Assembly: GCF_963921235.1 (NCBI RefSeq) | Contig: NC_086100.1 | Coordinates: 167,090,001-167,154,000 of the forward strand | Origin: Mobula hypostoma | Taxonomy: Eukaryota | Direction: 5' to 3' | Length of the DNA stretch: 64,000 bases | Shown: positions 4,290-40,100 of the stretch, one piece after another | How the letters are laid out: every line of letters starts with the position of its first letter | How positions within the stretch are numbered: the stretch's first letter is position 1 | Position numbers and translations under genes: made by a program | Notes under the pieces: model-generated | The model's database searches: none | Told to the model about the DNA's origin: nothing | Seen by the model: only the letters and a program-made list of their open reading frames with translations

Positions 4290-4470
4290 CTGAAACAAAA
4301 AAGAGCATTTCCTATATTTCTTTCTTGCAATTACATAACCTATGTTCACTCATCAACTAATCAATAAGCACAGAAACAAAGAGTGCAAGAACTTAACTTC
4401 AAAGAAACAATATTCTGATGATGTGTTCAGCAATGAAAGCAAGTTTGAAAAAACAGAATAGTTTACTTGT

Positions 4471-4957
4471 AACACACATTAAAGTTGCTGGTGAATGCAG
4501 CAGGCCAGGCAGCATCTCTAAGAAGAGGTGCAGTCGACGTTTCAGGCCGAGACCCTTCATCAGGATTAACTGAAGGAAGAGTTAGTAAGAGATTTGAAAG
4601 TGGGAGGGGGAGGGGGAGATCCAAAATGATAGGAGAAGACAGAAGGGGGAGGGATGGAGCCAAGAGCTGGCCTGAAACGTCGCCTGTACCTCTTCCTACC
4701 AGCCCTTGGCTCCATCCCTCCCCCTCCTGTCTTCTCCTGTCATTTTGGATCTCCCCCTCCCCCTCCCACTTTCAAATTTCTCACTAACTCTTCCTTCAGT
4801 TAGTCCTGACAAACAACAGGAATTCGGGTCTCGGCCTGAAACGTCGACTGCACCTCTTCCTAGAGATGCTGCCTGGCCTGCTGCGTTCACCAGCAACTTT
4901 AATGTGTGTTGCCTGAATTTCCAGCATCTGCAGAATTCCTGTTGTTTGCGTTTTTAA
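4471..4957. mobile_element. Palindromic Penelope-like insertion A
   Basis: Inverted arms ~4471-4670 and ~4700-4950; near-perfect TSD AATAGTTT(T)ACTTGT at 4457-4470 and 4958-4972. Confidence 0.85.
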
Positions 4958-5715
4958 AATAGTTTTACTTGTGATTTGTTGCCTGTGCCTTGCAAACATC
5001 TCACTACACGATCACTTGTAGATGTGCTCCTTCAGTTCCAATTTCAGCCACCTTATTTCCCAAAGCCCTAGAAATTTTCCTGCCCTCCCAAACTTCTCCT
5101 TTTAGATGTTCTGAATAAATGCCTACTAGAAAAAAATACAGAAAGAGCCTAACCATCTTAGTGTCAAATTTTATTTGTTAACACCTTCTACAGAAGTGCC
5201 TTAAAATCATATTATAGGTGCTACGCAAGTGCAAGTTGCCATAGTATCACAAATGGGACATATATTTTCTTTCTTGTTCCTGCTATCTCCCATATTAGGG
5301 TGGTTTTATGCCAATGGCTAAAGTTTGCTGCAAAAGGTTCAGGATTATCCCATCTCAGTTCGCTTGTCCTCTCATTCATCTACCTTACTGAAGTGCTGGG
5401 ATAGGTTAATCCTAGCACAGCTTCTTTCAAATTTCTCCTGTGGTGAATCTGTGGAATCCATTGCCACTGATGGCTATGGAGGCCAAGTCATTGGGTATAT
5501 TTGAACTGGAGTTAGATACTGTAGGCTCTTGATTACTTAGGGTGTCAAAGGTTACAGGGAGAATGCAGGAAATTGGGGTTCAGAGGGATAGTCTTGATAG
5601 AATGGCAAAGGAGACTTGGTGAGCCAATTGGCCTAACTCTGATCCTGTCTTATGTGCACTACTGCTAATTTAAAAATAATGCACAAAATGTATTAATTGA
5701 AGACATTTGAGTATG

Positions 5716-5767
5716 GTGACACAGTGGCATAGTGGTTAGCACAGTGCAGCACCAGCAACCCAGGTTC
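5716..5767 (+). mobile_element. tRNA-derived SINE head interrupted by L1
   Basis: A-box-like TGGCATAGTGG, then CCAGGTTC immediately followed by the L1 tail; a possible continuation ATTCCT appears at ~9200. Confidence 0.45.
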
Positions 5768-8700
5768 TTTCTTTCTTTTCTTTTTAAATCTTTTTATTGA
5801 ATTAGTACACAAAGAGTAAAACATATAGCAACCAATACATTGTTAGGATATAAATATACAAGTAATATTAATACAAAAAAATGCAAACAACGTAAGTTAT
5901 AGAATAACAAGGTAATATAATTGTATACTAATTTTCCATACATACCAGTAGAACGAGAAAAAAAACCTACCGTGCAACTAACCTAACAAATCAAAGCAAT
6001 AGGCTAACTAGGTAAATAGTAGACGTGAACAAATTAAACAATCACGTCCTCAAACCCAACCTCCGCTAATAACAGATAAAATCCATGAAGGGAATGTATG
6101 TATGGTCAGAGAGAAAAAAAAGTTACATTAAATGAAAATATTGAATAAATGATCTCCAGGTCTGTTCAAATTTAACTGAAGTCTCATAAAGATTACTTCC
6201 GATTTTTTCCAAATTTAGACATAATATCGTTTGAGAGAACCAAAAAAACGTAGTTGGGGCATTAATCTCCTTCCAATGTTGTAGAATACATCTTTTCGCC
6301 ATTAAAGTAACATAGAAACACAGAAAATAGGTGCAGGAGTAGGCCATTCGGCCCTTTGAGCCTGCACCAGCATTCAGTATGATCATGGCTGATCATCCAA
6401 CTCAGAACCCCGCCCCAGCCTTCCCTCCATACCCCCTGATCCCTGTAGCCACAAGGGCCATATCTAACTCCCTCTTAAATATAGCCAATGAACTGGCCTC
6501 AACTGTTTCCTGTGGCAGAGAATTCCACAGATTCACCACTCTCCGTGTGAAGAAGTTTTTCCTAATCTCGGTCCTAAAAGGCTTCCCCTTTATCCTCGAA
6601 CTGTGACCCCTCATTCTGGACTTCCCCAACATCGGGAACAATCTTCCTGCATCTAGCCTGTCCAATCCCTTTAGGATTTTATACGTTTCAATAAAATCCC
6701 CCCTCAATCTTCTAAATTCCAACGAGTATAAGCCTAGTCGATCCAGTCTTTCATCATATGAAAGTCCTGCCATCCCAGGAATCAATCTGATGAACCTTCT
6801 TTGTACTCCCTCTATGGCAAGGATGTCTTTCCTCAGATTAGGGGACCAAAACTGCACACAATACTCCAGGTGTGGTCTCACCAAGGCCTTGTACAACTGA
6901 AGTAGTAACCTCCTTGCTCCTGTTCTCGAATCCTCTTGCTATAAATGCCAGCACACCATTCACTTTTTTCACCGCCTACAGTACCTGCATGCCCACTTTC
7001 AATGACTGGTGTATAATGACACCCAGTTCTCGTTGCACCTCCCCTTTTCCTAATCGGCCACCATTCAGATAATAATCTGTTTTCTTGTTTTTGCCACCAA
7101 AGTGGATAACCTCACATTTATCCACATTGCAATGCAATCATTCTACGCACTGAGGGGGGTAAATTACTAGAAGTTTTAGGTAATCCAAAAATAGCAGTAA
7201 TAGGATGGGGAGAAATATCACTATTCAAAACCTTTGAGATAATATTAAAAATGTCTTTCCAAAAAGTTTCCAGAGTAGGACAAGACCAAAACATGTGGGT
7301 CAAGGAAGCTATCTCCCCATGACATCTATCGCAAAGAGAGTTAATATGAGAATAAAAACGAGCTAATTTACCTTTAGACATGTGTGCTCTATGGACAACT
7401 TTAAATTGAATTAAGGAGTGTTTGGAACAGAAAGAGGAAGTATTAACAAGTTGTAAAATATAGGCCCAGTCCTCAGCTGGGATAGTAAGACCCAATTCCT
7501 TTTCCCAGTCAGTCCTAATCTTGTCGAATGCAGCTTCCCTAAATTTCATGATGGTATTATAAATAGTAGCCGTTACACCTTTCTGACAGGGGTTGAGGTT
7601 GATGATAGCATCTAAAATATTTGTAGGGGTTAATGCCGGAAAGGAAGAAAGTATGGTATTTAGGAAATTCCTAACTTGCAAATATCTAAAAAAAATGTGT
7701 TCTTGGTAAATTGTATTTGTTAGATAACTGTTCAAAAGATATAAGGGAGCCATCTGAAAATAAGTCCGAAAACCGTGATATACCGTTAGTCTTCCAAATT
7801 TGAAAGGCACGGTCCGTAGAGGAGGGGAGAAAAAATATATTGCCAATAATAGGAATCGCTAGCACGAATTGATTAAGATCGAAAAATTTTCGGAATTGAA
7901 ACCAGATACGTAAGGTATGTTTAACTATCGGGTTGCAAACCTGCTTATAGCGTTTCAAATCCGAAGGAAGAGAAGATCCTAATGTAGAGCCAAGTGCATA
8001 GCCTGGAACAGAATGTAATTCCAATATTACCCATTTAGGGATGGGTAGTGTATCTTGGTCAAGTAGCCAAAATTTCATGTGACGAATATTAATTGCCCAG
8101 TAATAAAATCTAAAGTTAGGTAATGCCAAGCCTCCATCTCTCTTAACTTTCTGTAGATGTATTCTACCCAACCTCGGGTTTTTATTTTGCCAAATAAATG
8201 AAGAGATTTCAGAGTCTACTTTATCAAAAAAGGATTTTGGAACAAAAATCGGTAATGCCAGAAATATATATAAAAATTCTGGCAGAATAAACATCTTAAC
8301 AGCATTAATACAACCAGTCAAAGTTAAATAAAGTGGAGACCATTTAAAGGAAAGTTGTGTAATATGGTCAATTAAGGGTAAGTAATTAGTCTTAAATAAA
8401 TCCTTATGTTTACAGGTAATCTTAATCCCAAGATATGAAAAATGATTATTAACCAATCTAAACAGCAGGTTCTGATATAAGGGAACTTGCTTATTAATAG
8501 GGAAAAGTTCACTCTTATTAAGATTTAATTTGTATCCTGAAAAAAGGCTAAATTTTGCTAATAAATCTAAAGCTGCTGGGATAGATTTTTGAGGATTAGA
8601 AATACATAAGATTAAGTCATCAGCATAAAGTGATACTTTATGAGACTTTAACACACGAGTTATACCAATAATGTGAGGAGATTCTCAAACAGCAATTGCA

Positions 8701-9195
8701 AGTGGTTCTAATGCTATATCAAATAATAAAGGGCTAAGAGGACACCCTTGTCTGGTACCTCGAAAAAGAGGGAAAAAAGGTGAGTTTTGAGTATTAGTAC
8801 GAACTGAGGCCATAGGAGAGTAGTATAACAATTTGATCCAGGATACAAATTTCCGGCTGAAGTTAAACATTTCAGGCACCTTAAATAAGTAGGGCCATTT
8901 GACCCTGTCAAAGGCTTTTTCAGCGTCTAGGGAAATGACGCATTCAGGATCGTTTTGTGATGGGGTATAGACAATATTTAAAAGTGTACGAATATTATAA
9001 AAAGAGTAATGATTCTTAATAAAACCCGTTTGGTCTTCTGAAATAATATAAGGAAGCGCTTTTTCTAGTCTATTTGCTAATAATTTAGAAAAACTCTTAG
9101 AGTCAACATTTAACAAGGATGTTGGTCTATAAGATGCGCATTGAGCGGGGTCTTTATCCTTCTTTAATATTAAAGAGATCAATGCTCTATAAAAG
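5768..9195 (-). mobile_element. 5'-truncated L1-clade LINE (ORF2 RT plus C-terminal CCHC), disrupted and interrupted by CR1
   Basis: ORFs 8685-9209 (YRPTSLLNVD, SLDAEKAFDRV, RGTRQGCPLSPLLF), 7686-8654 (LYADD) and 7118-7846 (CDRC...HMFWSC), with the C-terminus resuming at 6123-6309. AATAAA and a (GAAA)n-like tail lie at ~5768-5797. Confidence 0.9.
6310..7129 (-). mobile_element. Young CR1 LINE 3' fragment inserted in L1
   Basis: ORF 6402-6896 ([18 protein letters not shown]...) is nearly identical to the C-terminus of the 44360-46501 ORF; (TTCTATGT)-type tail at 6310-6328. Confidence 0.92.
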
Positions 9196-9446
9196 GACAT
9201 ATTCCTCACTGTATCACAATAAATAAATAAATACTAGGTAAGTGAGGAATTAAGTATCATTCCATACACTTAATATACTGCTACAAGTTACCAATTACGA
9301 CAATTAGTTACACTTATATAAAGGAATTAATATGGTAAACATCCCAAAGCACTCAAGAAGATTGTTAAAAATACTAACCAACAGTTGACACTGAAATAAT
9401 CTGACTTGTGTAAAGCCTGGTCAAGCGGTTAGGGTTTAAAGCAGAA

Positions 9447-10343
9447 TGCAAACACGAGGAATTCTGCCGATGCTGGAAATTCAAACAATACACATCAAAG
9501 TTGCTGGTGAATGCAGCAGGCCAGGCAGCATCTCTAGGAAGAGGTACAGTCAACGTTTCGGGCCGAGACCCTTCGACAGGACTAACTGAAGGAAGAGCTA
9601 GTAAGAGATTTGAAAGTGGGAGGGGGAGATCCAAAATGATAGAAGACAGGAGGGGTAGGGATGGATCCAAGAGCTGGACAGGTGATTGGCAAAAAGGATA
9701 TGAGAGGATCATGGGACAGGAGGCCCAGGGAGAAGGAAAAGGGGGAGGGGGAAAAAAACCCAGAGGATGGGCAAGGGGTATAGTCAGAGGGAGGAAAAGG
9801 AGAGAGAGAGAAAGAATGTGTGTATATAAATAAATAACGGATGGGGTACGGGGGGAGGTGGGGCATTAGCGGAAGTTAATGTTCATGCCATCAGGTTGGA
9901 GGCTACCCAGATGGAATATAAGGTGTTGTTCCTCCAACCTGAGTGTGGCTTCATCTTTACAGTAGAGGAGGCTGCGGACAGACATATCAGAATGGGAATG
10001 GGACGTGGAATTACATTCTTTCTCTCACTCTCCTTTTTCTCCCTCTGACTATACCCCTTGCCCATCCTCTGGGTTCCCCCTCCCCCTTTCCTTCTCCCTG
10101 GGCCCCATGTCCCATGATCCTCTCATATCCCTTTTGCCAATCAACTGTCCAGCTCTTGGCTCCATCCCACCCCCTCCTGTCTTCTCCTATCATTTTGGAT
10201 CTCCCCCTCCCCCTTTCAAATCTCTAGCTCTTCCTTCAGTTAGTCCTAACGAAGGGTCTCGGCCCGAAACGTCGACTGTACCTCTTCCTAGAGATGCTGC
10301 CTGGCCTGCTGCATTCACCAGGAGCAACTTTGATGTGTGTTGA
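9447..10343. mobile_element. Palindromic Penelope-like insertion B
   Basis: Inverted arms join near 10012; TSD TTTAAAGCAGAA at 9435-9446 and 10344-10355; the left arm includes the end of the GIY-YIG coding region. Confidence 0.88.
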
Positions 10344-11489
10344 TTTAAAGCAGAAGTTTGGTGTTGAAATTCCAGAAGCCCTTAGTTTCTACTATTTTTG
10401 CCTGCAACTAAAATCTGAAAGTGCAATAGGCCATAACTAAGAATGCATAAAGCTGAGAGACTGTAAGGCTGGGTAAGTGGCTTAAGTCAAGATAGGAGAA
10501 CCAAATTGGAGATCAAATATTTATACTGTACTGGGAATTTCAGGGAGAGGAAATGGGTGAGTAAGCACAGGATTAACACGTGAACAGGACTTATCAAAGT
10601 TAGGACATTTTAGATAAGCTCAGAAGCTGGGAAATGCATAGGAAAAGTCAAGTCCAGGAGGAAATTAACCCCTTGTAATAAATACTAAAAAACATAGCTA
10701 AACCAAAGTATTAATGAGGGTTTGGAATCACCAATCACAAAATCTACCAACATATTCACAAAATCAATTATATCAAAAATTTGCATTTACATAGCACATA
10801 CTTTAATATCAGAAAAATGTGTCGCGCAAGGACTAAAACCGAGTGATCAAATAGGTGGTCATCAGATAGGTTAATGGAAGAATTTCTGCAGCCCCGGATC
10901 CAAATTACGTGGGGGGGGGGGGTGAAAGGAAAGTTAGCTCCAAAATTCAAATTAACTACAAACTTTGTAATAGTGACCTTGACGAGGAGGGGATTGTCCG
11001 GCATGAAAGGGGGAGGTGGGAAGGAGTCGGCGTGGATAAGATGTACTGGGTGGTGTCCAGTGGGATGGATGGGAGAGGGGAAAACAGAAATGAGCGAAAA
11101 TTCTGGAGGGGAGGTATCCTGGGGAGTTGTCCCGGGCTGAGTTTTTGCAGGAGGGTGTACTGGAGAGTGCCACTCAGAGGATGTTTCATAGGGTGGGGAA
11201 GGGAGCCCCGAGGGAAGAGGTGGAGAGAAGGGCTCTAGGTCCCACGGAAGAGGGTGGGCGTAGAGTTGATGGTCGTGGTCCCGGACATTGGGGCCGGAGC
11301 TGAGCGGATGCTCATGTGACTCCAGTCAGCTGATCATCGCCTGGGGTTACTGGAACATTCCAGGGAGTAGCCGGTTGTCTTCCACACCCCCCCCCCCCCA
11401 GCTCACACTGGGATGAAACTTCAGGGACGGAAAGTTGTCCCTGGCTCCGGCCGCTCGGGCCGTCTATCCCAGTCGGCTCTCCCGGTTAC

Positions 11490-11560
11490 CTGAGAGAGAT
11501 CCAAACGCCCGGACTCCACCCACCGATCTCTCACAGCGGAAGTGCTCGCCCACCCGGCCT
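11490..11560 (-). other. LAMTOR3: LAMTOR3 non-coding exon 1 (5' boundary approximate)
   Basis: Lies in a CpG-rich island with donor CTCTCAG|gtaacc at 11490/11489, directly downstream of the promoter motifs. Confidence 0.7.
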
Positions 11561-11700
11561 GTTCCTGTTCTCGGCACAGCATTGGCCAGGGGTCACGTGA
11601 TAGAGCGCGGCAAAACAGGCGTTAGGCGGGGCTTACTCCCGTGTCACGTGACGATACAGGACGATCCCTTACATCACGTGACGGAGGGTGCCTTCTGATG
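11537..11700 (-). promoter_or_regulatory. LAMTOR3 CpG-island promoter with three CLEAR-type E-boxes, CCAAT, GC box and ETS site
   Basis: GTCACGTGAT 11592-11601, GTCACGTGAC 11643-11652, ATCACGTGAC 11673-11682, ATTGG 11581-11585, GGCGGGG ~11625, CGGAAGTG 11537-11544. Confidence 0.8.
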
Positions 11701-13459
11701 TCGGGCGGCAGAGTCTGCGCATTAGTGTCAGTATCTGGCTGTCGCTGCCAGCTATCTTAAGTGTTGTCCAGAATTGCAGACTATTCCCAAAAATTTGCAC
11801 ATTGCTGACAACAACTGGCCACTGATACCTGTGCTAGCAGGCAGCGCACATAGCTTCTGCCTCAGGTTGTTAGCAGTGAAGACTCGTCAAGTTTCCCATT
11901 TTCCTCCTCTTCAAATCTTACCCCTTTTATAAATAAAGCAGTCCTGATAAAGCGGGTTTAATCATCTGCATAGACACTGCCTGACCTGAATTCCCCCGGC
12001 AGTTTGTGTGTGTTGCTCCGGATTTGCTGCATCTCGTGTTTATCAAGTCCCCATCTCCACCTTTAACCTGTGGCACCAACATTTATCCTTAGATTGGGAC
12101 CGAAGCTGCTCACAAAACTTCGGTTCGCTGAGGGAGTCGGGGGGTGGTCACTTTAAAGCCTCGTTTATACTTCTGCGTCAACACGACGCCGTAACATACG
12201 CAAGTGGCTCTGTGCATCTGCAGCACGATATTTTGCTCTTGCAATGAAGATCGATGCACTACAGTATTTGGAGATCCCAGACTACAGATGCTGGAATTCG
12301 GAGCAACTAACAATATACTGGAGGAACTCAGTGGAAATTCCTTACCTCCCACAATGCCACTCAACCTTCGAGATCCTTCAAGAGAGCTTATTGTTCAACC
12401 TACCACCCTCTCCTTCACTGCCTGCTTCACCTGAACACTTGCTTTAAGTGACTGGATTTTAATGAAATCTGTCTCACGTATCTCCCCTTTTCCCCAGTGT
12501 ATCATAACCCCTGAATAATGATGTTGTTGGAACCAAAATTAGTGCCTGCCCGTTTAGAACAGAAGAGGATTTTTCCCCCTCCAGGGTCATCTGCCCCAGA
12601 GAACAGTGAGAAGTAATTTGATTTATTAGAGGTGGTGGAATCAAACACAATCACTACATCAAAGAGACATTTAGGCAGGCATTTGATTAACTAAAGCATG
12701 GGATATAGCTCTAATGCAGATAAACTGTTCAGCCTTTCCACCTACCACGTCTGTGCTGACCATAATGCCAAGTTTAACTGTATGTCCACATCTGTTTAAA
12801 TGTCTCTTAAGTAACACTATCATATTGCTTCCACCATCTCCCATGGCAGCACACCCCAGGTACCCATAACTGTAAAACGTGCCTCGTAAATCTTCTTCAA
12901 CTGTCTCCCTCTCATTGTAAACCTATACCCTCTACTATTTGTTATTTTCACCCTGGGAAATAAAAAGACTCTATATTCCTACCTAGGTGTTCCAGGCTTT
13001 ATGAACCTCTAACCTCTATCACGACAACCCTCAGCCTCCGATCCTCCAGAGAGAACAGTTCCAGGTTTGTCCAGCCTCTCATTATAGCTAATACTCTCCA
13101 ATCCGGGCAGTAGCTGTGACACTGGGTATAGCACTCTCGCTGAGTAACTTTGTGGGGTAGCAAGGATCTGGAGGGTGAAATGGCCTGTTTCTTGTGCTGC
13201 AGAGCTCCATGACCCAAAATGCAGAGGATCAATAGGCATTTCCACTAAAGGAGTCCAAAGATGGGGGGGGGGGGGAATGAGTAATGCTGAGGTCAAGAAT
13301 GGATTAGTCTTGATCTTGCTGAATGGCAAAGTTGACTAATTGGATTACTCCTAACGTTCTTCTAAGAATTTTGCAAGATCCAGGATAAATTGATTGTGTC
13401 ACCCTTCATCAAAACAAGCCCAGACTCAAAGCCATCCAGTTTACACACTTAAAATAACT

Positions 13460-13465
13460 TTTATT
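13460..13465 (-). terminator. Candidate distal poly(A) signal of DNAJB14 (proximal candidate at 15904-15909)
   Basis: AATAAA on the minus strand (TTTATT on plus) at the end of an AT-rich, UTR-like stretch. Confidence 0.35.
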
Positions 13466-15989: not shown

Positions 15990-16114
15990 TCAGCCTCCTC
16001 GATACAAATCATTTAGTTTTGCTAGCTTCTCACAACTTTCCATCTTCATCAGCTCCGCTCTCTTTCGAAGGCGATCATCTCGGTACACCTTGGCCGCATA
16101 AAGATAGTCACTTC
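15990..16114 (-). CDS. DNAJB14: DNAJB14 exon 8 CDS (125 nt, includes stop)
   Basis: [40 protein letters not shown]; AAG acceptor; TGA at 15992-15990. Confidence 0.93.
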
Positions 16115-25100: not shown

Positions 25101-28100
25101 CAGAACATTGGATACTTGTCCTTTTAAGAAGACAAGACCAGCTTCATCCTTAACTTTGATCTGGCAGGAGGCCAACATTTTCTGTCCTTCTCCATTTGTC
25201 CTTGAACACAGCAGCTCATTATACAGAAGTACCACCAGGTTCAAGGACAGTTTCTACCTGTTATTGAACGGTCCTCACATACACTAAAAGATGAACCCTT
25301 GATCTCCCAACCTACCTTGCCAAGGCCCCTTGAACCCTGTCTATCTGCTCTGCACATGTATATCTAGCATTTTGTTTTATATTTACTACCTCAATGTACT
25401 TATGTACAGAATGATCTCTCTGGATGGCACACAACCAAAAGCCTTACACCGCATCTCAGTACATATGGCAATAATAATCCAATATAGATCTGTAGCGAGT
25501 TAACTCCATGATCCAGTTAGCTCTGGTATTACACTTAGATCCACGAGAATAATGGTGACAAATCCCATTAATAATGTAAAAAAACAGTATCCGAGATATG
25601 AAATGGGTTTAGAACACTAAGGATGCTTAGCAGATGCTGGATGTTCACAGCATTTTCTGATTTACACCAAGTCCCTTTCCCCACAGGCTTCAAATAAAGC
25701 AACTTAGATTTTTACAATAATAACCTTTTTAAATGCAGAATTAATTAATTGGCTGAATTTAAAAATTCACAGCTGTCACAGTGGGCTTAGTTCTGGAATA
25801 TTATCAGTCTACCACCACACCTCATGAATGTGTTTTTCTGTTAACACAGAGACAAGGTGATGCTTATGTAACTGAGGCCTTTGTCATCCACTGGCCTTTT
25901 GGATAACTTTGTTATCTGCCGTGGATCTGCAAATTTAAGGTTCACCTACAGCACACTTCAATGTTTTCCCCTGGGAGGCACCAAAACACTTGGATCACAG
26001 ACTTGTCCTAGCAAGCTCAGTAATCCAGAGCCCGGGTCCAGGGAGTGGAGATGTCGAGAGCTGTCAGAAGCAGGAACTTATATTGAACTCACTATATCCA
26101 TACACAGTTTATTTCCAGTGGCCTTGGTGCTTTGTACATATTGTTGTTATCAAAGGGATAACAGTTCTGTCCATGGGAATGATGACCTAGTGTCCCATCC
26201 ATATTGGGAGGAAGCTATTCTAACCAAATCTAAGGCAGCAGGCTTTTCACATGATCCCAACTCCTAATCAACTTCTAATGGGGACAGCACAGTAGCGTAG
26301 CGATTTGCATTACACTATTACAACGCCAGCAAGCCAGGTTCAATTCCAGCAGGTTTTCTCCAGGTCCTCCAGTTTCCTCCCACATTTCAAACTTACAGGT
26401 TAGTAATTTAATTGGTCACGTAGGTATAATTAGGTGATAGGGGTCATTGTGCCAGCTGTTACTGTGCTGCATCTCTAAATAAAATCAGAGTTGCCCAAGA
26501 ATTTCGATTAATATTCAAGACACCACTGAGGCCTCCATCAGCAGGCTTTGGGGTTGGGGCAATCGAGGCTAGGTTATAAAACCGGGGCCATTGCTGGCAA
26601 CACTTAAATCAGGTGGTGTCTACCCCATGTCAAACCCTGAAACAGGCAAATTCTTCCACATGGTTTTTATAGCCACCCCTCCGTGGACTCCGATCACACT
26701 TCCTGCTGCCTCAGGAAATCAGGCAACATAATCAAAGACCTCTCCCACCTTAGTCATTCTCTCTTTCCTTACCTCCTCCCAATCAGGCAGAAGATACAAA
26801 AGTTTGAGAACACACACCAGCAGGCTCAGGAACAGCTTCTATCTACACCTGAATGCATTTCTTGTACACAAAACATAATTCTTGATCTCTTGTTGTGATC
26901 CTTGCACTTTATTATCTGCCTTCAGTGCACTTTCTTCGTAGTTGTAAAACTATATTATGCAATCAGTTTTCCTTTTTACTACCTTGATGCACTTTGATCT
27001 GTGTGGATGGTATGTTCACTGTATCTCTGTACATCTGACAATGATAAGCCAATTATCACCTAGGACTCCACCTCACCTTCAATGACATCAGCTAAACCAG
27101 CATATTGATGCTACTTTTATCCGTAGATGCTGTCTGGCCTGGTGAGTTCCTCCAGCATTTTGTGTGTGTTGCTTGGATTTACAGCATCTGCAGATTTTCT
27201 CTTGTTTGTGATATCCAATGTATCTCCCACCTTCCCGAGAATGAAAGGTTTAGTTACATGAGGAGCTGTGGGCCTGTACTGGCTGGAGTTTAGAAGAATG
27301 AAGGAGGGATCTCAGTATAACTTATTGAATATTGAAAAGCCTAGATGGAGAGATGTGCAAAGGACGTTTCCTATAGTGGAGGAGCCTAAGACCAGAGGGC
27401 ATAGCCTCAGAATACAAGGATGTCTCTTTAGAACAGAGATGAGAAGAATTTCTTTACCCAGAGGGTGGTGAATCTGTGGAATTTATTGCCACAGGTGGCT
27501 GTGGAGGCCAAGTCATTGGGTACACTTAGAACAGAGATTACTAGGTTCTCAATTAGTAAGAGTATCAAAGGCTATGGGAAGGCCGGCAAGATAATTAAGT
27601 TGACAAGATAACTATTCAGCCACGATGGAACGGCAAAGGAGACTCAATGGGCCGAATGGCCTAATTCTGCTCTTTTATTTTGCTCTGGGTCCTGTTGCCC
27701 ATTCATCATCCTGTTTAAGTACAGCCTGCTGGACATTTATCAGAGTTCACATTCCACTGGAAATCTGGGGTGTCTTGGCAGATGGGGTGTAGCACCACTC
27801 CCTCCATATCCCCTACCATCGCCACTGGGTGCCCCAAAAGCAACGGGACTCCACATTCAGCACAAGGTGCAGCACTTCAAAGCAGTGGGTCACTCCCACC
27901 TTCTCAAGGGCAGTTAGCAATGGGAAATAAATGCTGAGTCCAGCAGGGACACCCAAAAACCACCTTTTGAATAGAAGAGCAACAGAAAAGGCACTGGAGA
28001 AACTCAATGGGTCAGGAAGCATAAATGGAGGAAAATGGACAGTGGACATTTTGAGTCAAGACCCTTAAATAAATTCTACAATATTCAGAAATCCAATGGG

Positions 28101-31100: not shown

Positions 31101-34100
31101 CAAAGACACAGGGCAGAGATCACACCACAAGCAGAACGAAAAGAAAATCTCTAAGCTCACCTTTAAACGCCTCGGTCGCTCCAGGTGCATGGTTTTTATC
31201 AGGATGAAACTTCAGCGCCAGTTTCCTGTAAGCTTTCTTCAGATCCTCGTCAGGTGCATCCTTGCTGACCCCGAGGATTTCATAGTAATCTTTACATTTC
31301 TTTATCCTGGGTTGGAATAGTCAAATCACCATTACTAGCATGCTAATGCACAGAGGTGGAAGAGGTCAAGGCCTGGTGCCAGGCAAGTAACCTCTTCCGC
31401 AACGCCAACAAGACAAAGGGGATGGTTATCAACTTTAGGACAACTCACACCCCTCTTTACATTGGCGGCACAGCAGTGGAAACTGTGAGCAGTTTCAAAC
31501 TCCTTGGAGTGCATACCTCGCACAACCTCTCATGGCCCCAGAATACATCCTACACAACCAAGAAAACTCACCAAGGCCTCCGTTTGCTGAGGAGGCTGAA
31601 AGAGAGCTGGACTTATGCACATCTATACTTACAACCTTCTACAGATGCGCAGTAGAGAGCATCCAAACATGCGGTATCAATGCATGGTATAGAAACTGCA
31701 ATGCGGCAGACAGAAAGACTTGCAACAGGTAGTCCAGACTACCCAAAGCAACACTGGCAGCAGCCTACACACTGTCAAGGACATATATACAGAACGGTGC
31801 CAGAAAAATGCCAACGATATCATGAAGGATCCCACATGCACTGCTCATGGACTGTTTGCCCCGTTCCCATCAGGGAGGAGGCTGGTAGCATCCACTTCAA
31901 GCAACACGTATGTAAGTCCTGACGAAGGGTCTCGGCTCGAAACGTCGACAGTACCTCTTCCTAGAGATGCTGCCTGGCCTGCCGCGTTCACCAGCAACTT
32001 TTATGTGTGTTGCTTGAAATTCCAGCATCTGCAGATTTCCTCGTGTTAGCATCCACTTCAAGATCACTAGACTCAAAAAGAGTTACTTTCTCCCGTAGTA
32101 AGGCTAATCGATACTTCCACCCACTAACCCAACTCACAAAGCATCCTCCCCAATGCCACTTCTTTATCACTTCTTATCAGAATTAAGTACAGGCACACCT
32201 GCACCTAGCATCAATTTATGTACATACAATCAGTCTATATATATAATCTAGCTTACATAGAGATATTTATTGTGTTTTTTTTTATTATTCTGTTCTTTTT
32301 GTGCTACGTCAGATCCGGAGAAACAATTATTTTGTTCTCCTTTATACGTTCTCCGGAAATTACATGAACAATCTTGAAGTTAGCCTGTAGTATCCCAGAC
32401 CACGTAGCCAAAAATCAAAATCCCAACGGCAAAGTTCACCAAGTTGCAACATGGCTCACGCTGCAAAGGTCTCAACCTTTTCATTCTTCAGGAACCCTCA
32501 ACAAACCTCTACAGACCTCAGATTTCACCATTTAACAACTGACTGCATTTATATAGCACCTATAATGTGGCAAAACATCCCAAGAGGATTCACGGCAGGG
32601 GAGACGGCCTGACGTCATGTTACAGAGGGGTAAGTGATCAAAGGCAAATTCAAGGAACAAGGATTTCAAAAGCGTCTAAGGAAGTAGAAACAGAGTGTGG
32701 GAATTCCAGAGCTTGGGCTGTAGCCAACATCAGTAGACCTGCTTTAGCACCAACCCCCTGCGGGGCCCCTTCAAATCACTCAGCATCCCGATATGGAAAC
32801 ACAGAATGTATATCACCAGCCCATCATCCTCACTGGAACAGCACTGTGGAAAATCCTTCACAAGAATGGCTGCAGTGGTTGAGCGCACCACACACACCTC
32901 AGAGGGAAGGGCAATATTGCTGGCCTTGCCAACGATGCCCATATCCTGCAGATGACTAAATAAAAATGACAAAAGAGGCAGTGAACAACGGTGGAAAGAT
33001 GTTATTTTAAAAGCTTGAAACTGGAGGATCAGGTAGTGCTGAGGAAGCAGAGAGTCTGCAAAAGGATCTAGTCAAATTGGGAGAATGGTCAGAGCGGCAG
33101 ATGGAATACAATGTATGGTCACGTGCTTTGGTAGAAGGAAAAAAGGCACAGATTATTTTCTAAACATGGAGAAAATTTTTTTTAAATCTGAGGTGCAAAG
33201 GGACTCGGGAATCCTTGTGTAGGATTCCCTAAAGGTTAACTTGCAGGAGGAAGGCAAATGTAATGTTAACATTCATTTCTAGAGGACTAGAATATAAGAG
33301 CAAGGATGTAGTGCTGAGGCTTTATAAGGCCGTGGTCAGACTACACTTGAAGTATTGTGAACAGTCTTGCGCCCCTTATCTAAGACAAGATGTACTAGCG
33401 TTGGAGAGTGTCCAGAGGGAGATTCACAAGAATTATTCCGGGAATGAAAGAGTTAATATATGAGAAACATTTGATGACTCTGGGCCTGTACTTGCTGGAG
33501 CTTAGAAGAATTCGGGGGGGGGGCGGGGGGGAAGAGAAGAATCTCACTGAAACCCATTACATATTGAAAGGCCTAAATGGAGTGGATGTGGAGAGAATGT
33601 GGGTGAGACTAGATCTAGAACGCACAGCATCAAAATAGCAGAATATAGGGATGTCCATTTAGAACCGAGATGTGGAAGAATTTCTTTAGTCAGGGGGTGG
33701 TGAACCTGTGGAATTCATTGCCACATACGGCTGTGGAGGCCAAGTCATTGAATATATTTAAAGCGAAGGTTGATAGGTTCTTTATTACTCAGGGTGTCAA
33801 AGGTTAAGGGAAGAACGCAGTAGAATGGGGTTGAGAGGATTAATAAATCAGCCAATATTAGAATGGCTAAGTGACCTAAAATGACCTACACTTTTGGAGG
33901 CAGTAACAGGAGAAGAGAAGGATCGGAACAAAATTCAAGCAAACAGATATCCAACAGTCAATGGGAGAACAGTGAATGGTCATTCAAAACTGTAATCCAT
34001 TGGTCCAGAGCCACTGAATGGGATGAGATCAGAGCCAACGTTCATACAATTTGGAATGTGAAAATGAATTCTTCACATGTTTCTGCAACACCACATTTTG

Positions 34101-37100
34101 AGAGAGAAAAATATGTAGGTTTGTGTTCCATTTCAGGGTTCAGACAGAAAAACCAAGGCTGGAGATTTGGTGGAGTACTCCGCCACCATCTCCTGGTCAT
34201 GACAACACCGAAACCCCTCTGTTCTTCCAGTGGGGTCCCCAGAAGTCTGCAGAGTATAAAATCTAATGCTGACTGAGGAATTCAAGCCTAAGTGGATCAT
34301 ATCTTTCTTTAAAACTGTCATTACTAAAACACCTACCAATATCATCACCCATTGGCAGAAAGAGGGCTGCAGAGTGGAAATACAAGTAGACTAAACAGCA
34401 GAAGGCCACTTGGCTCCTGAAACCTTGCCCCAGCATTTAATGTGAACATGGCTGCTCTCCCCCAGGCCTCAAACTTGGTGCAATACCCCAGCTGTGGCCT
34501 CAGCACATCTATACAACTGAAACACTATTTCCTCATTTCTAAACTCCAATCCCCTATAACGGCCAAGGAACCATTTACCTTCCTAAGAACTCAATGCACC
34601 TGCCCGCTATCATTTGTGATTCACACACACAACACCGAGAGCCCTTCATACAGGGAACAGCAGAGGTCATTAGATCATCACTTTTTCCATTTAATTAGGA
34701 AGACAGGGCTTATGAGATTGCCTGGTTATCACTTTAACGAGCTGTATTCATTGGAGTTCAGGAGTATGAGGTGCAACCTTATTCAAATATACTAGATCCC
34801 AAAGGGGCCTGACAGGACAGAGTTGAAATGTCTATTTTCAGATACCATTCTAAAGGCACATGAATGTGCATGGAATGGAGCAATATGGATTGCTTGCAGG
34901 CAACAGATAATAAGCTTATTTCAACATCATCTTCGGTATAGACATCGTGGTTCAAAGGGCATGTTCCTATGCTATACTGTTCTCCATTCTCACGAGCGGT
35001 AGGGTCATGAACAAGGGGACATAATGACAAGGTAGGTAGCTGATCATTTAAAACGGAGGCATTTAGAAGTTTCTCCTCTTTGACGGTTTTGAAAATCTGG
35101 AATTTTCTGCCAAGTGCAGTGGAGGACAGGTTATTAGATATTTAAGGTGGAGACAGGCAAATTTGGAAGATCAAGGAATTGAGGACTGCAGGGAACTGGC
35201 ACAAACTGAGGCCAGTATAGATCAAGCAACATACATAAAAGTTGCTGGTGAACGCAGCAGGCCAGGCAGCATCTCTAGGAAGAGGTGCAGTTGACGTTTC
35301 AGGCCGAGACCCTTCGTCAGGACTCGAAGGGTCTCGGCCTGAAACGTCGACTGCAGCTCTTCCTAGAGATGCTGCCTGGCCTGCTGCGTTCACCAGCAAC
35401 TTTTATGTGTGTTGCTTGAATTTCCAGCATCTGCAGAATTCCTGTCGTTTGCCAGTATAGATCAGCCATGATTATATTGGGTGATGGGGCAGGCTTGAGT
35501 GGCCTACGCCTATTTTGTTGTGAGCTTTTCAATTAGTGGGTGTCAAACCAATCTCACTCCTTCTGTCCCACTCCTCTCCCCCAACCCACCTCCACCTCCA
35601 GCCTTCCCACCGGTCCTTCATTCCTGTAATAAGGTCGGAAGAAAGTCCAGCCTTGCACGGTTTCACTGACACACTCCTTTACCGCCAGCCATTCATACCT
35701 CTGAACTCCTTCCAATTGCTCACTCGTGTAGGCCTTTGCTGTCTCCATTTTCTCCTCCTTCTCTGGCATGGCCCCATTTTCAGCTGGGCCCGTAGACTTT
35801 GCCTGGTTAGGCTTGCCCGATTCAGGTCGCTGTCGCGGACCACCAGCAGCACTTCCATTCTTAGTGATAGCATCTATTAGTGCTAAAGGGAGCAAGAAGA
35901 TAAATAAAGGATATGGTTAGGGGAGAGGCAGGGCAGATCGATTCTGGGATAGTGAAAATTGAGAGATAAAGCAGCCTGGGTTTAAATCTGTGTGATCCTT
36001 TGACTCATGGTGTAATGATGACCTTTTAAACTACTCCAAGATCAACCTAATGCTTCCTTCCCACACAGTACTCCATTTTTCTTTCATCCAAGTCTGTAAA
36101 TTTCCCTAATGTATCTGCCTCTACCAGCAATCCCAGCAGTGTATTCTGGGCACTGACCACACTCAACGTAAAAAAAAAAACACACTACCTCTGACATCCC
36201 TTCCCTATACTTTCTTCCAATCACCTTAAAATTATGTTCATGCATAATAGCCATTTCCACCCTGGGAAAAACATAACCTTTCGAAGAATAAGCGATGATC
36301 TAACTGGTGTAGATCTTCATTACAGAACCTACGGGATAGACAGAGGGATACTGAGCACCCAGAGCTGGAGGTTACACTTCAGTACAGAGGCTCAACCATT
36401 CAGACTGAGATGAGGAGAAATTTCTTCATCCAGACAGAGAAGTGAACCTTTAGAATTTGCTACCACCTATCAAGGCTGCGGAGGCTCAAGTATTTTCAGA
36501 TCAGAGATCAATAGATTTTTTAGATAATAAGACAAACAATAGGGTTAGAGTGGAGGGAAAAGATTAACCGGTATCTCTTGGTAGCCAGCATTTTAATTCC
36601 ACTTCCCACTCCCATAATGACAAGTTGGTCCACGATATTCTACTGCCTCATACACTACCTTGGTAGTCTGCAAGCTGACAGCATGAATATTGATTTCTCT
36701 AACTTCTGCTAACCACTCTCCTCCCCCACTTTCACCCCAGCCCCCATCATCCCTTTCCACTGCTCTGCCCTCTCATTCTGCCTATCACTCACATATTTCT
36801 ACTAACAGTTCCCTCTCTCTTTATTCCATGGCTCACTGTCCTCTCCGATTAAATTCATCTTCTTCAGGTCAAGTCACTTCCACCTATCACCTCCCAGCTT
36901 TGTACACCACCCCCATTCTCTCCCTCCATCCCATCACCCCCATCACTTGGATTCATCAATCACCAGCCAGCTCTTGCTCCAACCTTGCTCTACCCCCACC
37001 CATTTTACACCCACTATCTCCCCTCTTTCTTCCTAGTCCAGATGAAGATTCACAACCTGAAGCGTTGACTGTCGACTTCCCTCCATAGATGCTGCCTGAC

Positions 37101-40100
37101 GTGCTGTCTTCCTCCAGTATTTCGTACCTTGCAAAAGATGGATTAGAGGAACAGGCACAAGTAGCCTAGCCTGATTCTGTTCTGTCGCATTCTGAAGCTG
37201 AAGAGAAACACTGCCAGAGGAACAGATGCCCCTCCAACCCCAGTGTGTAGCTGCAGCTTCCTGAATCCCCATGAGTTCCCACCACAACATCAGTGTCCTC
37301 AAAGACACAGCGGTGCTCAATCAGCAATGGCAAAGCTGCCAATTTACAGCACACCACCTTTCACTGTTCGGTCAGATGGCAATAGAATGGCTCTGAATTG
37401 TTTTAACGGAGCCTTACTCTCTCACTCCTTCAAGCCATCTCCAGGTTATTTCACGTTATTTGGTAGACACCATGCATCACCCCCAACAACCTTCTTTGTA
37501 ACTTACATCAAAGTTGCTGGTGAACGCAGCAGGCCAGGCAGCATCTGTAGGAAGAGGTGCAGTCGACGTTTCAGGCCGAGACCCTTCGTCAGGACTAACT
37601 GAAGGAAGAGTGAGTAAGGGATTTGAAAGTTGGAGGGGGAGGGGGAGATCCAAAATGATAGAAGACAGGAGGAGGAGGGATAGAGCCGAGAGCTGGACAG
37701 GTGATTGGCAAAAGGGGATACGAGAGGATCATGGGACAGGAGGTCCGGGAAGAAAGTCAAGGGGGGGGGGCCCCAGAGGATGGGCAAGAGGTATATTCAG
37801 AGGGACAGAGGGAGAAAAAGGAGAGTGAGAGAAAGAATGTGTGCATAAAAATGAGTAACAGATGGGGTACGAGGGGGAGGTGGGGCCTTAGCGGAAGTTA
37901 GAGAAGTCGATGTTCATGCCATCAGGTTGGAGGCTACCCAGACGGAATATAAGGTGTTGTTCCTCCAACCTGAGTGTGGCTTCATCTTTACAGTAGAGGA
38001 GGCCGTGGATGGACATGTCAGAATGGGAATGGGATGTGGAATTAAAATGTGTGGCCACTGGGAGATCCTGCTTTCTCTGGCGGACAGAGCGTAGATGTTC
38101 AGCAAAGAGGTCTCCCAGTCTGCGTCGGGTCTCGCCAATATATAAAAGGCCACATCGGGAGAACCAGACGCAGTATATCACCCCAGTCGACTCACAGGTG
38201 AAGTGTTGCCTCACCTGGAAGGACTGTTTGGGGCCCTGAATGGTGGTAAGGGAGGAAGTGTAAGGGCATGTGTAGCACTTGTTCCGCTTACACTGATAAG
38301 TGCCAGGTAGCCTCCAACCTGATGGCATGAACATTGACTTCTCTAACTTCCGCTAAGGCCCCACCTCCCCCTCGTACCCCATCTGTTACTCATTTTTATG
38401 CACACATTCTTTCTCTCACTCTCCTTTTTCTCCCTCTGTCCCTCTGAATATACCTCTTGCCCATCCTCTGGGTCCCCCCCCCCGCCGTCTTTCTTCCCGG
38501 ACCTCCTGTCCCATGATCCTCTCGTATTCCCTTTTGCCTATCACCTGTCCAGCTCTTGGCTCTATCCCTCCCCCTCCTGTCTTCTCCTATCATTTTCGAT
38601 CTCCCCCTCCCCCTCCAACTTTCAAATCCCTTACTCACTCTTCCTTCAGTTAGTCCTGACGAAGGGTCTCGGCCTGAAACGTCGACTGCACCTCTTCCTA
38701 CAGATGCTGCCTGGCCTGCTGCGTTCACCAGCAACTTTGATGTGTGTTGCTTGAATTTCCAGCATCTGCAGAATTCCTGTTGTTTTCTTTGTAACTTGTT
38801 TGTTTGGGCCACTGTATTATTTACTCAATCCTCCATTAGGAGCAACTTGGGCTTGTTTGGAGGGCAGCGTACTGGAGAGTGTGCGCATCATCAATGGCCA
38901 CTCTGAGAGCACAACAGTCATAATCCAACTGTCCAAAATGGGAGGTCTTCAAGTAGAAGCCACTAACACAGCCAAACACCTACTCTACCCACAAACTGAC
39001 TTCTCCCACAAAATCACAGCCAGTAACCCCTACTCTGTATCATTTGACCCTTACCTCACATCCCTGTCCCAAAGGATCAATTTTGTGAACAGTAAGATCC
39101 ACATGAAAGTGGATCTCATTACTGTAATACTATCTGCTGAAAAAGTACCCACTCCGAGGTATTGGGGAGAACTCTCTTGCTCTTCAAAATCACATGAAGG
39201 GATTTTTAACATTCTCCTATACAAGGACAGGCAATATATCAGCTTAACATCTTATCAAATTACAGAAGGAAAGGCAGAGGGATCGCTGACCGATAAACTT
39301 AGCTTCCAGATCATAAGCCAATACCAAGAATGAGTTAAGTTCTGATAGTAAGTTCCTCAGATTTTATCAGTGGAAAAACTTGGCTGGGGTCTGAGATCAG
39401 GTTGTCCAGAGAAAACAGCACCATTAAAGGTATCCTGACTGGTTACATCATGGTTTAATGCCGCAATTTAACGCGCAGGAACACAAGCGACAGAGAATCC
39501 TGGACTCGGCCCAACACATCCCTGCCCACCACTAGTAATACTAACAGGAGGCATGGCCTCAAGAAAAAAAATCATCCATCAAGGACCACCACTATCTAGT
39601 CTACGCCATCTTCTCACAGCTACCATTGGCTAGGAGGTAGAGAAGTTTGACGTCCCACACTGTTCGGTTCAAGAACAGCTAATTCCTTTCAACATTCAGT
39701 TCTTGAACCAAACGTCAAAAGTCTAAATCACTACAAATTAGCAATGCTATGACCACCTTGCACTAAAATGGACATTTTTGTTCTGTGTTCTTTCCTGTAA
39801 AAAATTTGATAATTTATGTTTTATGTATTTTTGAGCATATGATGCCATGTGCCTGTGATGCTGCCGTTAAGTGTGTTTACATTGCACCTGTGTGAAAAAA
39901 AAGATCAGCATAGAGTTCGAGCCTCCTGGTGTTCAGACCAACAGTAAAGAAACCTCGTCAAGACAGTGGGTACTCCCCATGTGAAAATTTTATGAAATTT
40001 GATAAATGATGGTTGCTGGCGATGGAAGAGATCTTCAAACTGGGGAGCATTACAGAGCCAATCAGCGAGGGTGTAAGATTCCATCACATCCAACAAGACT

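What the first reader, a model, noticed from the sequence alone, without database searches (positions are those of the whole stretch)
4457..38797. Recurrent palindromic Penelope-like insertions with outward-facing 3' ends and 12-16 bp TSDs
Seen: five independent young insertions (4471-4957, 9447-10343, 31902-32046, 35225-35450, 37505-38784) share one architecture. Two inverted copies of the element 3' end point outward, one arm keeps the full tail (...CTGCAGAATTCCTGTTGTTT) and the other stops about 25-45 nt short, near TGTGTGTTGC. Each is flanked by a direct duplication (14/15, 12, 16, 14 and 13 bp). The inner junction varies, giving total lengths from ~145 bp to ~1.3 kb. Known: Penelope-like elements (GIY-YIG plus RT) can form inverted pLTR structures with a short tail extension. 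Inference: both target strands are primed at two preferred sites on the element RNA and the cDNAs are joined internally, giving a retro-derived, MITE-like foldback as the dominant product in this lineage.
Basis: partly seen in the sequence, partly recalled or inferred. Interest (0 to 1): 0.8.

Follow-up and report, generated by a model that had tools for sequence, protein, structure and literature searches.

The report
Penelope-like retrotransposon inverted-pair insertions
The five hairpin-shaped repeats are real, but they are the usual footprint of a very abundant Penelope-like jumping gene in a devil-ray-type genome: two inverted, 5'-truncated copies of its 3' end inside one short target duplication, a shape and a mechanism that are already published.

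Summary
Observation confirmed. All five insertions are head-to-head inverted pairs of one element's 3' end. One arm carries the full tail and the other ends about 36 nt short. Each pair sits inside a 12-16 bp target-site duplication (TSD).

The element is an endonuclease-bearing Penelope-like element (PLE). The long arm at 37505-38305 encodes the C-terminus of a GIY-YIG endonuclease. A longer copy has one RT + GIY-YIG ORF, 92-94% identical to Mobula hypostoma proteins.

Genome-wide there are 27,586 exact 27-nt tails. Of the first 50 on contig 1:
- 32-34 have an adjacent inverted arm, and 16-18 are plain 5'-truncated copies with the same TSDs.
- The partner arm ends 26-45 nt short in 26 of 29 measured pairs.
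- Median TSD is 14 bp.
- Both nick sites show the same T-rich motif.
- Inner junctions are unique or nearly so, so the pairs form at integration rather than spreading as units.

This matches the published PLE signature: an inverted 5'-truncated copy and a 30-40 bp tail at one end (Arkhipova 2013; Craig 2021). It also matches the in vitro result that both target strands are cut and extended from two internal RT start sites (Frangieh 2024).

The scan has noted the same architecture on other DNA of this genome. I class it as an ordinary new member of a known kind, of low interest.

The parts
4457..4470 (.). Upstream TSD copy of insertion 1 (AATAGTTTACTTGT)
   Evidence: the downstream copy has one extra T
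4471..4670 (-). Insertion 1, inverted arm ending about 36 nt short of the full 3' end. It carries the motif with a canonical CUGAUGA core at 4536-4563.
4671..4698 (+). Insertion 1, 28-nt spacer between the arms. It is itself a fragment of the element (GGCCTGAAACGTCGCCTGTACCTCTTCCTA).
4699..4957 (+). Insertion 1, arm with the full tail (to 4947) plus the 10-nt extension GCGTTTTTAA
4958..4972 (.). Downstream TSD copy of insertion 1
9435..9446 (.). Upstream TSD of insertion 2 (TTTAAAGCAGAA)
9447..10012 (-). Insertion 2, longer inverted arm with the full tail facing left. It reaches into the end of the GIY-YIG coding region.
10013..10343 (+). Insertion 2, shorter arm ending at ...GATGTGTGTTGA (short end)
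10344..10355 (.). Downstream TSD of insertion 2
31886..31901 (.). Upstream TSD of insertion 3 (16 bp)
31902..31919 (-). Insertion 3, inverted arm of about 18 nt starting at the short-end site
31920..32046 (+). Insertion 3, arm with the motif and a variant tail
32047..32062 (.). Downstream TSD of insertion 3
35211..35224 (.). Upstream TSD of insertion 4 (GCCAGTATAGATCA)
35225..35320 (-). Insertion 4, inverted arm with the short end
35321..35450 (+). Insertion 4, arm with the full tail. The same inner-junction 28-mer occurs 9 times in the genome.
35451..35464 (.). Downstream TSD of insertion 4
37492..37504 (.). Upstream TSD of insertion 5 (TTCTTTGTAACTT)
37505..38305 (-). Insertion 5, 801-nt inverted arm with the short end. 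It contains the last 140 codons of the PLE ORF (GIY-YIG endonuclease, 37890-38310 minus strand) and about 390 nt after them.
38306..38784 (+). Insertion 5, 479-nt arm with the full tail. The inner junction is unique in the genome.
38785..38797 (.). Downstream TSD of insertion 5
38652..38687 (+). Minimal hammerhead-like motif (AGUC-CUGACGA-AGGGUCUCGGCCU-GAAAC-GUC|GACU). The predicted cut site is 102 nt from the full 3' end. Mirror copy at 37561-37596 (-).
   Evidence: Features compared with PMC4209133. Rfam finds nothing.

Best explanation
These are integration products of a very abundant endonuclease-bearing Penelope-like retrotransposon of a Mobula-type ray.

Proposed mechanism:
1. The element's GIY-YIG endonuclease nicks both target strands about 14 bp apart, at similar T-rich motifs. 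This leaves two 3' overhangs.
2. Each 3'-OH primes reverse transcription at an internal site near the 3' end of element RNA. One starts at the main site (...TTGTTT, sometimes 3-10 nt further). The other usually starts 26-45 nt upstream.
3. Both cDNAs stop early, most often 96-161 nt in, at or just upstream of the hammerhead-like motif.
4. The two cDNAs are joined head-to-head with 0-4 nt of microhomology or a few filler bases. Gap repair then duplicates the roughly 14 bp between the nicks.
5. When the second 3'-OH instead copies the first cDNA, an ordinary 5'-truncated single copy results. That happens in about one third of cases.

Shown here: the architecture, end-point clusters, TSDs, nick motif, shared haplotype of the arms, and uniqueness of junctions.

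Inferred: the order of events, and the use of RNA rather than cDNA as template for the second arm.
For: - Identity: GIY-YIG C-terminus. A 679-aa ORF with RVT_1 + GIY-YIG in L033. Relatives of 800-900 aa with the same two domains; closest are Mobula hypostoma 92-94% and Hypanus sabinus about 80%.
- Abundance: 27,586 exact 27-mer tails, reversed-pattern control 0.
- Architecture in 50 sampled tails: BLAST shows an adjacent inverted arm in 32. Two more have 10-20 nt mini-arms. The rest are singles.
- Partner outer ends lie at d=26-45 in 26 of 29 pairs, median 37.
- TSDs were found in 39 of 47 insertions, median 14 bp.
- Both nick contexts share T at +3: 24/39 and 25/39, pooled p=7e-10.
- Inner-junction k-mers occur 1, 2 and 9 times genome-wide.
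- Arms of one insertion are 98.0% alike against 95.8% between insertions, 0 of 5000 resamplings.
- Two pairs (L043, L019) differ at several subfamily-diagnostic sites, as expected if two template molecules can be used.
- Published: both strands cleaved and extended, two adjacent internal RT start sites, tail = the sequence between them (PMC11167929). Inverted copy + one-sided tail + TSD is typical of PLEs (PMC3846280, PMC8557442).
Against: - No direct evidence here that the second arm is copied from RNA rather than from the first cDNA.
- Several pairs are exactly symmetric: (633,633), (159,159), (134,134), (135,135). That would also fit self-priming.
- In vitro, no difference in start site between top and bottom strand was reported. 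Here about 90% of pairs are one-full / one-short, and simple independent priming does not explain this asymmetry.
- Genome-wide, an internal 20-mer is 2.48 times as frequent as a tail 20-mer. The sampled architecture predicts about 1.6, so tail-less copies or older subfamilies exist that the tail-anchored sample could not see.
- The hammerhead-like motif is not recognised by Rfam. In most copies it has U instead of C at position 11.1.
Confidence: 0.85

Rival explanations
1. Self-priming (snap-back). A single cDNA folds back on a local palindrome and copies itself, giving the second arm. The one-sided tail would come from later trimming or resolution. This is the interpretation favoured in Arkhipova et al. 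2013.
For: - Exactly or nearly symmetric pairs: (633,633), (1186,1170), (159,159), (134,134), (135,135), (141,142).
- Many inner junctions fall in the local hairpin CCTTCAG..CTGACGAAGG at d about 120-142.
- Arms share haplotype.
- PMC3846280 discusses self-priming from palindromes at inverted junctions.
Against: - Most long pairs are strongly asymmetric: 2760/927, 259/1210, 169/861, 44/904.
- Outer ends differ systematically (full versus 26-45 nt short). A self-copy would reproduce the same end.
- L019, although symmetric, and L043 carry different diagnostic variants on the two arms.
- Near-symmetry of short pairs is also expected if both cDNAs simply stop at the same hot spot. 42 of 75 arms end at d=96-161.
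Confidence: 0.1
2. The foldbacks are non-autonomous hairpin elements that are transcribed and retrotransposed as whole units, like a retro-MITE family with a few masters.
For: - L031 and L033 at different loci share the same 2760/927 junction at 97% identity.
- The 35225 junction 28-mer occurs 9 times.
- An earlier scan note (s1-141886) read one 242-bp foldback as re-copied.
Against: - Junction 28-mers occur 1, 2 and 9 times against 27,586 tails.
- Nearly every sampled pair has its own pair of inner end points.
- My rough estimate is that, with tens of thousands of pairs whose junctions fall in a roughly 50-nt hot spot, a handful of identical junctions is expected from independent events.
Confidence: 0.04
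3. DNA-transposon MITEs, two successive nested insertions, or an assembly artefact.
For: Terminal inverted repeats plus a TSD look superficially like a MITE. PLE endonuclease is reported to cut its own sequence (PMC11167929).
Against: - TSD length varies from 11 to 24 bp and the inner part is variable, unlike a cut-and-paste family.
- Singles share the same 3' end and TSDs.
- One TSD encloses the whole pair, with no internal TSD.
- Arms share haplotype.
- Contigs from independent runs and from a sister species end at the same element boundaries.
- Thousands of loci show the same pattern in a chromosome-scale assembly.
Confidence: 0.01

Closest known systems
Canonical EN+ Penelope-like elements (Penelope/Poseidon/Neptune type). 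Insertion structure as described by Evgen'ev & Arkhipova 2005, Arkhipova 2006, Arkhipova et al. 2013 (PMC3846280) and Craig et al. 2021 (PMC8557442).
   Same: [quoted passage not shown]
- Heavy 5' truncation.
- An inverted 5'-truncated copy placed head-to-head.
- A 30-40 bp tail at only one end.
- A short TSD of variable length.
- A minimal hammerhead-like motif near the 3' end.
   Different: - TSDs are longer here (median 14 bp, against 8-10 bp in the Adineta vaga examples).
- No direct pseudo-LTR tandem was seen in the copies sampled.
- Most copies are tiny (100-250 bp) pairs or singles that hold little more than the motif and the tail.
Poseidon of Anolis carolinensis (PAc) in vitro system, Frangieh et al. 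2024 (PMC11167929)
   Same: - Both target strands are cut and extended.
- RT starts at two adjacent internal RNA sites, and the tail is the sequence between them.
- T/AT-rich nick motif (5'-ATT-3' in vitro; N-N-T with a T-rich 3' side here).
- The hammerhead lies roughly 65-100 nt upstream of the start sites.
   Different: - In vitro, no strand difference in start site was reported. Here about 90% of genomic pairs combine one full and one short end.
- Joining of the two cDNAs has not been reconstituted in vitro.
Minimal PLE hammerheads (Cervera & de la Pena 2014, PMC4209133) and animal non-LTR retrozymes (PMC7229834; bioRxiv 10.64898/2026.07.22.740005)
   Same: - CUGANGA core, GAAA, and a palindromic C15.2/G16.2 with no loop 3.
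- A 4-5 bp helix I.
- Massive dispersal as short PLE-derived fragments.
   Different: - Copies here are inverted pairs or singles, not tandem arrays.
- Position 11.1 is U in most copies.
- Self-cleavage is untested, and Rfam models do not score the motif.

Membership tests
Penelope-like elements (EN+) | One ORF with a reverse transcriptase followed by a C-terminal GIY-YIG endonuclease | tested here: met
   L033:1718-3754 gives a 679-aa ORF with RVT_1 (E 2.5e-5) and GIY-YIG (E 6e-4). Both hits are below Pfam's curated cut-offs. Relatives of 806-889 aa show the same order. The window arm 37890-38310(-) is the GIY-YIG end of the ORF.
Penelope-like elements (EN+) | RT belongs to the PLE/telomerase-related clade | not tested
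   No phylogeny with named PLE and TERT references was built. There are 1,456 homologues at E<=1e-10, including 800-950 aa RT + GIY-YIG proteins from fishes and invertebrates.
Penelope-like elements (EN+) | Complex insertions: an inverted 5'-truncated copy and/or pseudo-LTR, with a 30-40 bp tail at one end only | tested here: met
   5 of 5 window insertions and 32-34 of 50 sampled tails are inverted pairs. The partner arm ends 26-45 nt short in 26 of 29. Direct pseudo-LTR tandems were not seen in the sample.
Penelope-like elements (EN+) | Short target-site duplication of variable length | tested here: met
   39 of 47 insertions have a TSD of 11-24 bp, median 14. Window TSDs are 12-16 bp.
Penelope-like elements (EN+) | Hammerhead ribozyme motif in the repeat or 3' region | tested here: inconclusive
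   Manual match to the min-HHR features of PMC4209133 at 38652-38687 and in other arms. No Rfam hit at gathering or at E<=10. No cleavage data.
MITE / cut-and-paste DNA transposon | Fixed-length TSD, uniform internal sequence, symmetric termini | tested here: not met
   TSD is 11-24 bp, inner junctions differ in nearly every copy, and one terminus is about 36 nt shorter.

The most novel reading that the evidence does not exclude
The near-obligate pairing of one full and one short 3' end within a single insertion (about 90% of pairs), together with the shared 5' stop zone at the hammerhead-like motif, may record a fixed asymmetry of a dimeric PLE ribonucleoprotein in vivo. In that reading the two subunits start at different registers on their RNAs, which in vitro work has not yet seen. 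This genome, with tens of thousands of young pairs, would then be a natural data set for working out the second half of PLE integration.
Probability: 0.2. Interest if true: 0.5.

Novelty: new member of a known kind. Interest (0 to 1): 0.25.

Why it matters
It matters mainly for annotation. These pairs have inverted ends and a TSD, so automatic pipelines can mistake them for MITEs or hairpin RNA genes. There are tens of thousands of them in this 3.5-Gb genome.

As biology it confirms, in a ray, the published PLE integration signature. It also adds some numbers:
- about two thirds of tail-bearing copies are inverted pairs;
- the stagger between nicks is about 14 bp;
- the same T-rich nick motif is used on both strands;
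- 5' ends pile up at the hammerhead-like motif.

These numbers could guide mechanistic work on the still unresolved joining step.

Tried and rejected
- Rfam (gathering threshold on the whole window, E<=10 on 37400-38900) found no hammerhead. The weak hits (PrrB/RsmZ, MIR8757, MAT2A_A) are noise.
- A DNA search of the own genome with the 145-nt tail returned nothing, because very common words are skipped. Exact pattern counts were used instead.
The sample therefore stayed at 50 tails, all from the first 3.8 Mb of contig 1 and all anchored on an exact full tail. That anchor cannot see short/short pairs or short-ended singles.
- L034/L023 looked like a near full-length copy, but the upstream ORFs are a LINE (Exo_endo_phos + RVT_1). 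The PLE part there is only about 1.09 kb.
- Laying short-read contigs of four runs gave no empty site. Contigs break at the repeat, the 37505 site in the sister species is undecided, and the listed joints are cross-mapping between copies.
- The listing of the internal 20-mer appears to lack minus-strand hits after about 2.2 Mb, so only the first 2.2 Mb was cross-tabulated by hand.
Natural copies served as references.
- No paper on PLEs in Mobula or other rays was found in the library.
Full report
**1. Observation**

Each insertion has two arms that are reverse complements of each other, 82-99% complementary.

The arms meet head-to-head, with the 5'-truncated ends inside and the 3' ends facing outward. 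Each insertion is enclosed by a direct duplication:
- 4457-4470 / 4958-4972: 14 vs 15 nt, one indel.
- 9435-9446 / 10344-10355: 12 bp.
- 31886-31901 / 32047-32062: 16 bp.
- 35211-35224 / 35451-35464: 14 bp.
- 37492-37504 / 38785-38797: 13 bp.

One arm carries the tail ...CCAGCATCTGCAGAATTCCTGTTGTTT or a close variant. The other arm stops near TGTGTGTTGC, about 36 nt earlier. A 16-mer of the element occurs 10 times in the window against 0.01 expected by chance.

In 31902-32046 the short arm is only about 18 nt. In 4471-4957 a 28-nt element fragment sits between two equal arms, and the tail runs 10 nt further (GCGTTTTTAA). BLAST also finds older, single fragments of related copies at 3916-4037, 27125-27206, 36589-37106 and 62415-62765.

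**2. What the element is**

The minus strand of 37890-38310 translates without stops into 140 residues that end the ORF. They contain a cysteine-rich stretch, then [25 protein letters not shown].... Pfam GIY-YIG matches this weakly (E 0.087).

A longer genomic copy, L033:1718-3754, is a 679-aa ORF with RVT_1 (E 2.5e-5) followed by GIY-YIG (E 6e-4). Both hits are below Pfam's curated cut-offs. Its relatives number 1,456 at E<=1e-10. The closest named ones are:
- Mobula hypostoma, 92-94% identity.
- Hypanus sabinus, about 80%.
- Chiloscyllium punctatum, 70%.

More distant relatives are 800-950 aa RT + GIY-YIG proteins of fishes and invertebrates. The 679-aa ORF therefore lacks roughly 120-200 N-terminal residues. 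RT followed by a C-terminal GIY-YIG endonuclease in one ORF is the architecture of canonical EN+ Penelope-like elements. The host is a myliobatiform ray close to Mobula.

About 102 nt from the full 3' end lies AGUC-CUGA(C/U)GA-AGGGUCUCGGCCU-GAAAC-GUC|GACU. It has several features of the minimal hammerheads of PLEs described by Cervera & de la Pena (PMC4209133):
- a CUGANGA core;
- GAAA;
- C15.2/G16.2 directly adjacent and palindromic, with no loop 3;
- a 4-5 bp helix I.

Rfam does not score it. Position 11.1 is U in nearly all copies. I treat it as a motif-level match only.

**3. Genome-wide check**

The window lies on contig 9 of a 3.48-Gb, 200-contig assembly. The exact 27-nt tail occurs 13,901 + 13,685 times, and the reversed-pattern control gives 0. 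I took the first 50 occurrences on contig 1 with their flanks.

I compared them with a natural 2,761-nt arm, the reverse complement of L031:1077-3837. Positions below are given as d, the distance from the full 3' end.

Results:
- Architecture: 32 tails have an inverted arm abutting the 5' junction. Two more (L054, L026) have 20- and 10-nt mini-arms. The remaining 16 are plain 5'-truncated copies, many with clean TSDs (for example L003, L004, L011, L024). Inverted pairs are therefore the majority (64-68%, 95% CI about 49-80%) but not the only product.
- Outer ends: the partner arm ends at d=26-45 in 26 of 29 measured pairs (median 37). Outliers are at 54, 77 and 80. A few insertions have full tails on both sides: L007/L008 is one 3.68-kb insertion, and L036/L037 is another, more complex case.
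- Extended tails: the full end itself sometimes runs on by GCG, GCGT or GCGTTTTTAA. Loose-end consensus in reads shows the same continuation. The template RNA evidently continues past this point, so initiation is internal.
- Inner ends: 42 of 75 arms, pairs and singles alike, end at d=96-161. That is within or just upstream of the hammerhead-like motif.
- Arm lengths: long pairs are mostly asymmetric (2760/927, 259/1210, 1072/1553, 169/861, 44/904). A minority are exactly symmetric (633/633, 1186/1170).
- Junctions: BLAST overlaps at junctions are usually 0-4 nt, and some junctions have small fillers instead.

**4. Target site**

TSDs were found in 39 of 47 insertions. Lengths run from 11 to 24 bp, mostly 13-15, with a median of 14.

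With 3' ends facing outward, the geometry requires the top-strand nick at the right edge of the duplicated segment and the bottom-strand nick at its left edge. That gives two 3' overhangs.

Read 5'->3' on the nicked strand, both contexts show the same bias:
- T at the third base beyond the nick: 24/39 and 25/39, pooled 49/78 against 29% background, p=7e-10.
- T-rich at +7 and +8.
- A depleted.

The same motif on both strands fits one endonuclease cutting twice. It also resembles the 5'-ATT-3' preference reported for the Anolis element.

**5. Are the pairs made at integration or copied as units?**

Junction-spanning 28-29-mers occur once (window 38305/38306), twice (L031/L033) and nine times (window 35316-35325, in the hot-spot zone). 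By my rough estimate, given tens of thousands of pairs, a handful of identical junctions in a roughly 50-nt hot spot is expected from independent events. Pairs therefore arise de novo. Copying of units is at most a minor route.

The two arms of one insertion share subfamily-diagnostic variants: 98.0% identity within insertions against 95.8% between, with 0 of 5000 resamplings reaching the within value. This argues against two unrelated nested insertions. L043 and L019 differ at several diagnostic sites between arms, as expected if two template molecules can be used.

**6. Counts that do not fully fit**

A CpG-free internal 20-mer (d=83-64) occurs 128,249 times. A tail 20-mer (d=26-7) occurs 51,761 times. 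The ratio is 2.48, whereas the sampled architecture predicts about 1.6.

Among 12 minus/plus internal-hit pairs in the first 2.2 Mb of contig 1, six have exactly one exact tail, none has two, and six have none. This fits one full tail per pair once mutational loss of exact words is allowed for.

The excess therefore probably comes from older subfamilies with different tails or from short-ended singles. The tail-anchored sample cannot see either. This remains open.

**7. Age and independent data**

Short-read contigs of four runs were laid on 32901-38900. Contigs of a sister species (organism B) have 2.3% flank divergence. They run 24 nt and 22 nt into the two ends of the 35225-35450 insertion, exactly as the source species' own contigs do. 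That insertion therefore predates the split.

The 37505 site could not be decided, and no empty site was recovered. The family is present at very high depth in three species.

**8. Comparison with what is known**

- Arkhipova et al. 2013 (PMC3846280) describe the typical Penelope structure as an ORF with pseudo-LTRs plus an adjacent inverted pLTR. A 31-bp tail is optionally present at the end of one inverted pLTR, the whole is flanked by a TSD, and head-to-head is the most frequent arrangement.
- Craig et al. [quoted passage not shown]
- Frangieh et al. 2024 (PMC11167929) show in vitro that the Anolis PLE protein cleaves and extends both strands. Reverse transcription starts at two adjacent internal RNA sites, and the genomic tail is the sequence between them.

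What is particular here is quantitative:
- the very large copy number;
- the predominance of tiny copies consisting of the motif and tail;
- a roughly 14-bp stagger between nicks;
- a strong one-full / one-short rule within pairs, which the in vitro work did not see as a strand difference.

**9. Earlier scan notes**

The scan has noted the same architecture elsewhere in this genome. One follow-up (s1-141886) also concluded that the hairpin shape is the usual by-product of PLE integration.

**10. Verdict**

It is a new family member of a known kind, formed by a known route. Confidence that these are canonical PLE integration products is about 0.85-0.9. Confidence in the specific double target-primed route, as against self-priming for the second arm, is about 0.6. 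Interest 0.25.

Noticed in passing
L031:1077-4761 and L033:510-4131 (contig 1 at 0.397 Mb and 1.824 Mb): Two 3.6-kb inverted pairs at different loci share the same inner junction (arms 2760/927) at 97% identity. That junction 28-mer occurs only twice in the genome. One copy has full tails on both sides, and the other has one end 54 nt short. This may be a rare case of a pair being re-copied as a unit.
   Followed up: partly
L037 (contig 1: 2454582-2459082), 416 to 39 nt before the tail end: An arm ends at the usual short site (d=35). About 377 bp that do not match the PLE reference follow, and then an exact 39-40 nt tail. This could be a nested insertion exactly at the short-end site, or captured filler.
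   Followed up: no
L009 (contig 1: 519927-522953): A copy in which element positions d=2745-1237 are joined directly to the last 28 nt of the tail. This is an internal-deletion or template-jump derivative.
   Followed up: no
L033:4826-5892: A tandem array with a period of roughly 75 bp (units 86-92% alike) lies about 700 bp beyond a PLE pair.
   Followed up: no
L034:3761-6724: A LINE with Exo_endo_phos and RVT_1 domains and two frameshifts abuts a 1.09-kb PLE fragment. It first looked like a full-length PLE.
   Followed up: yes
window 33100-33900, 36100-36300, 36900-37300: Other very high-copy repeats, judged by contig depth in all four runs. These are different elements or old PLE relatives and were not identified.
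   Followed up: no
homologues P0007, P0031: RefSeq models of Hypanus sabinus and Mobula hypostoma are named as isoforms of host genes (divergent protein kinase domain 1C; chitinase domain-containing protein 1). They match the PLE ORF at 78-87%, so they probably include PLE fragments in the gene predictions.
   Followed up: no
whole genome: The internal PLE 20-mer is 2.48 times as frequent as the tail 20-mer. That is more than the sampled architecture predicts, so there is an unseen class of tail-less copies or older subfamilies.
   Followed up: partly
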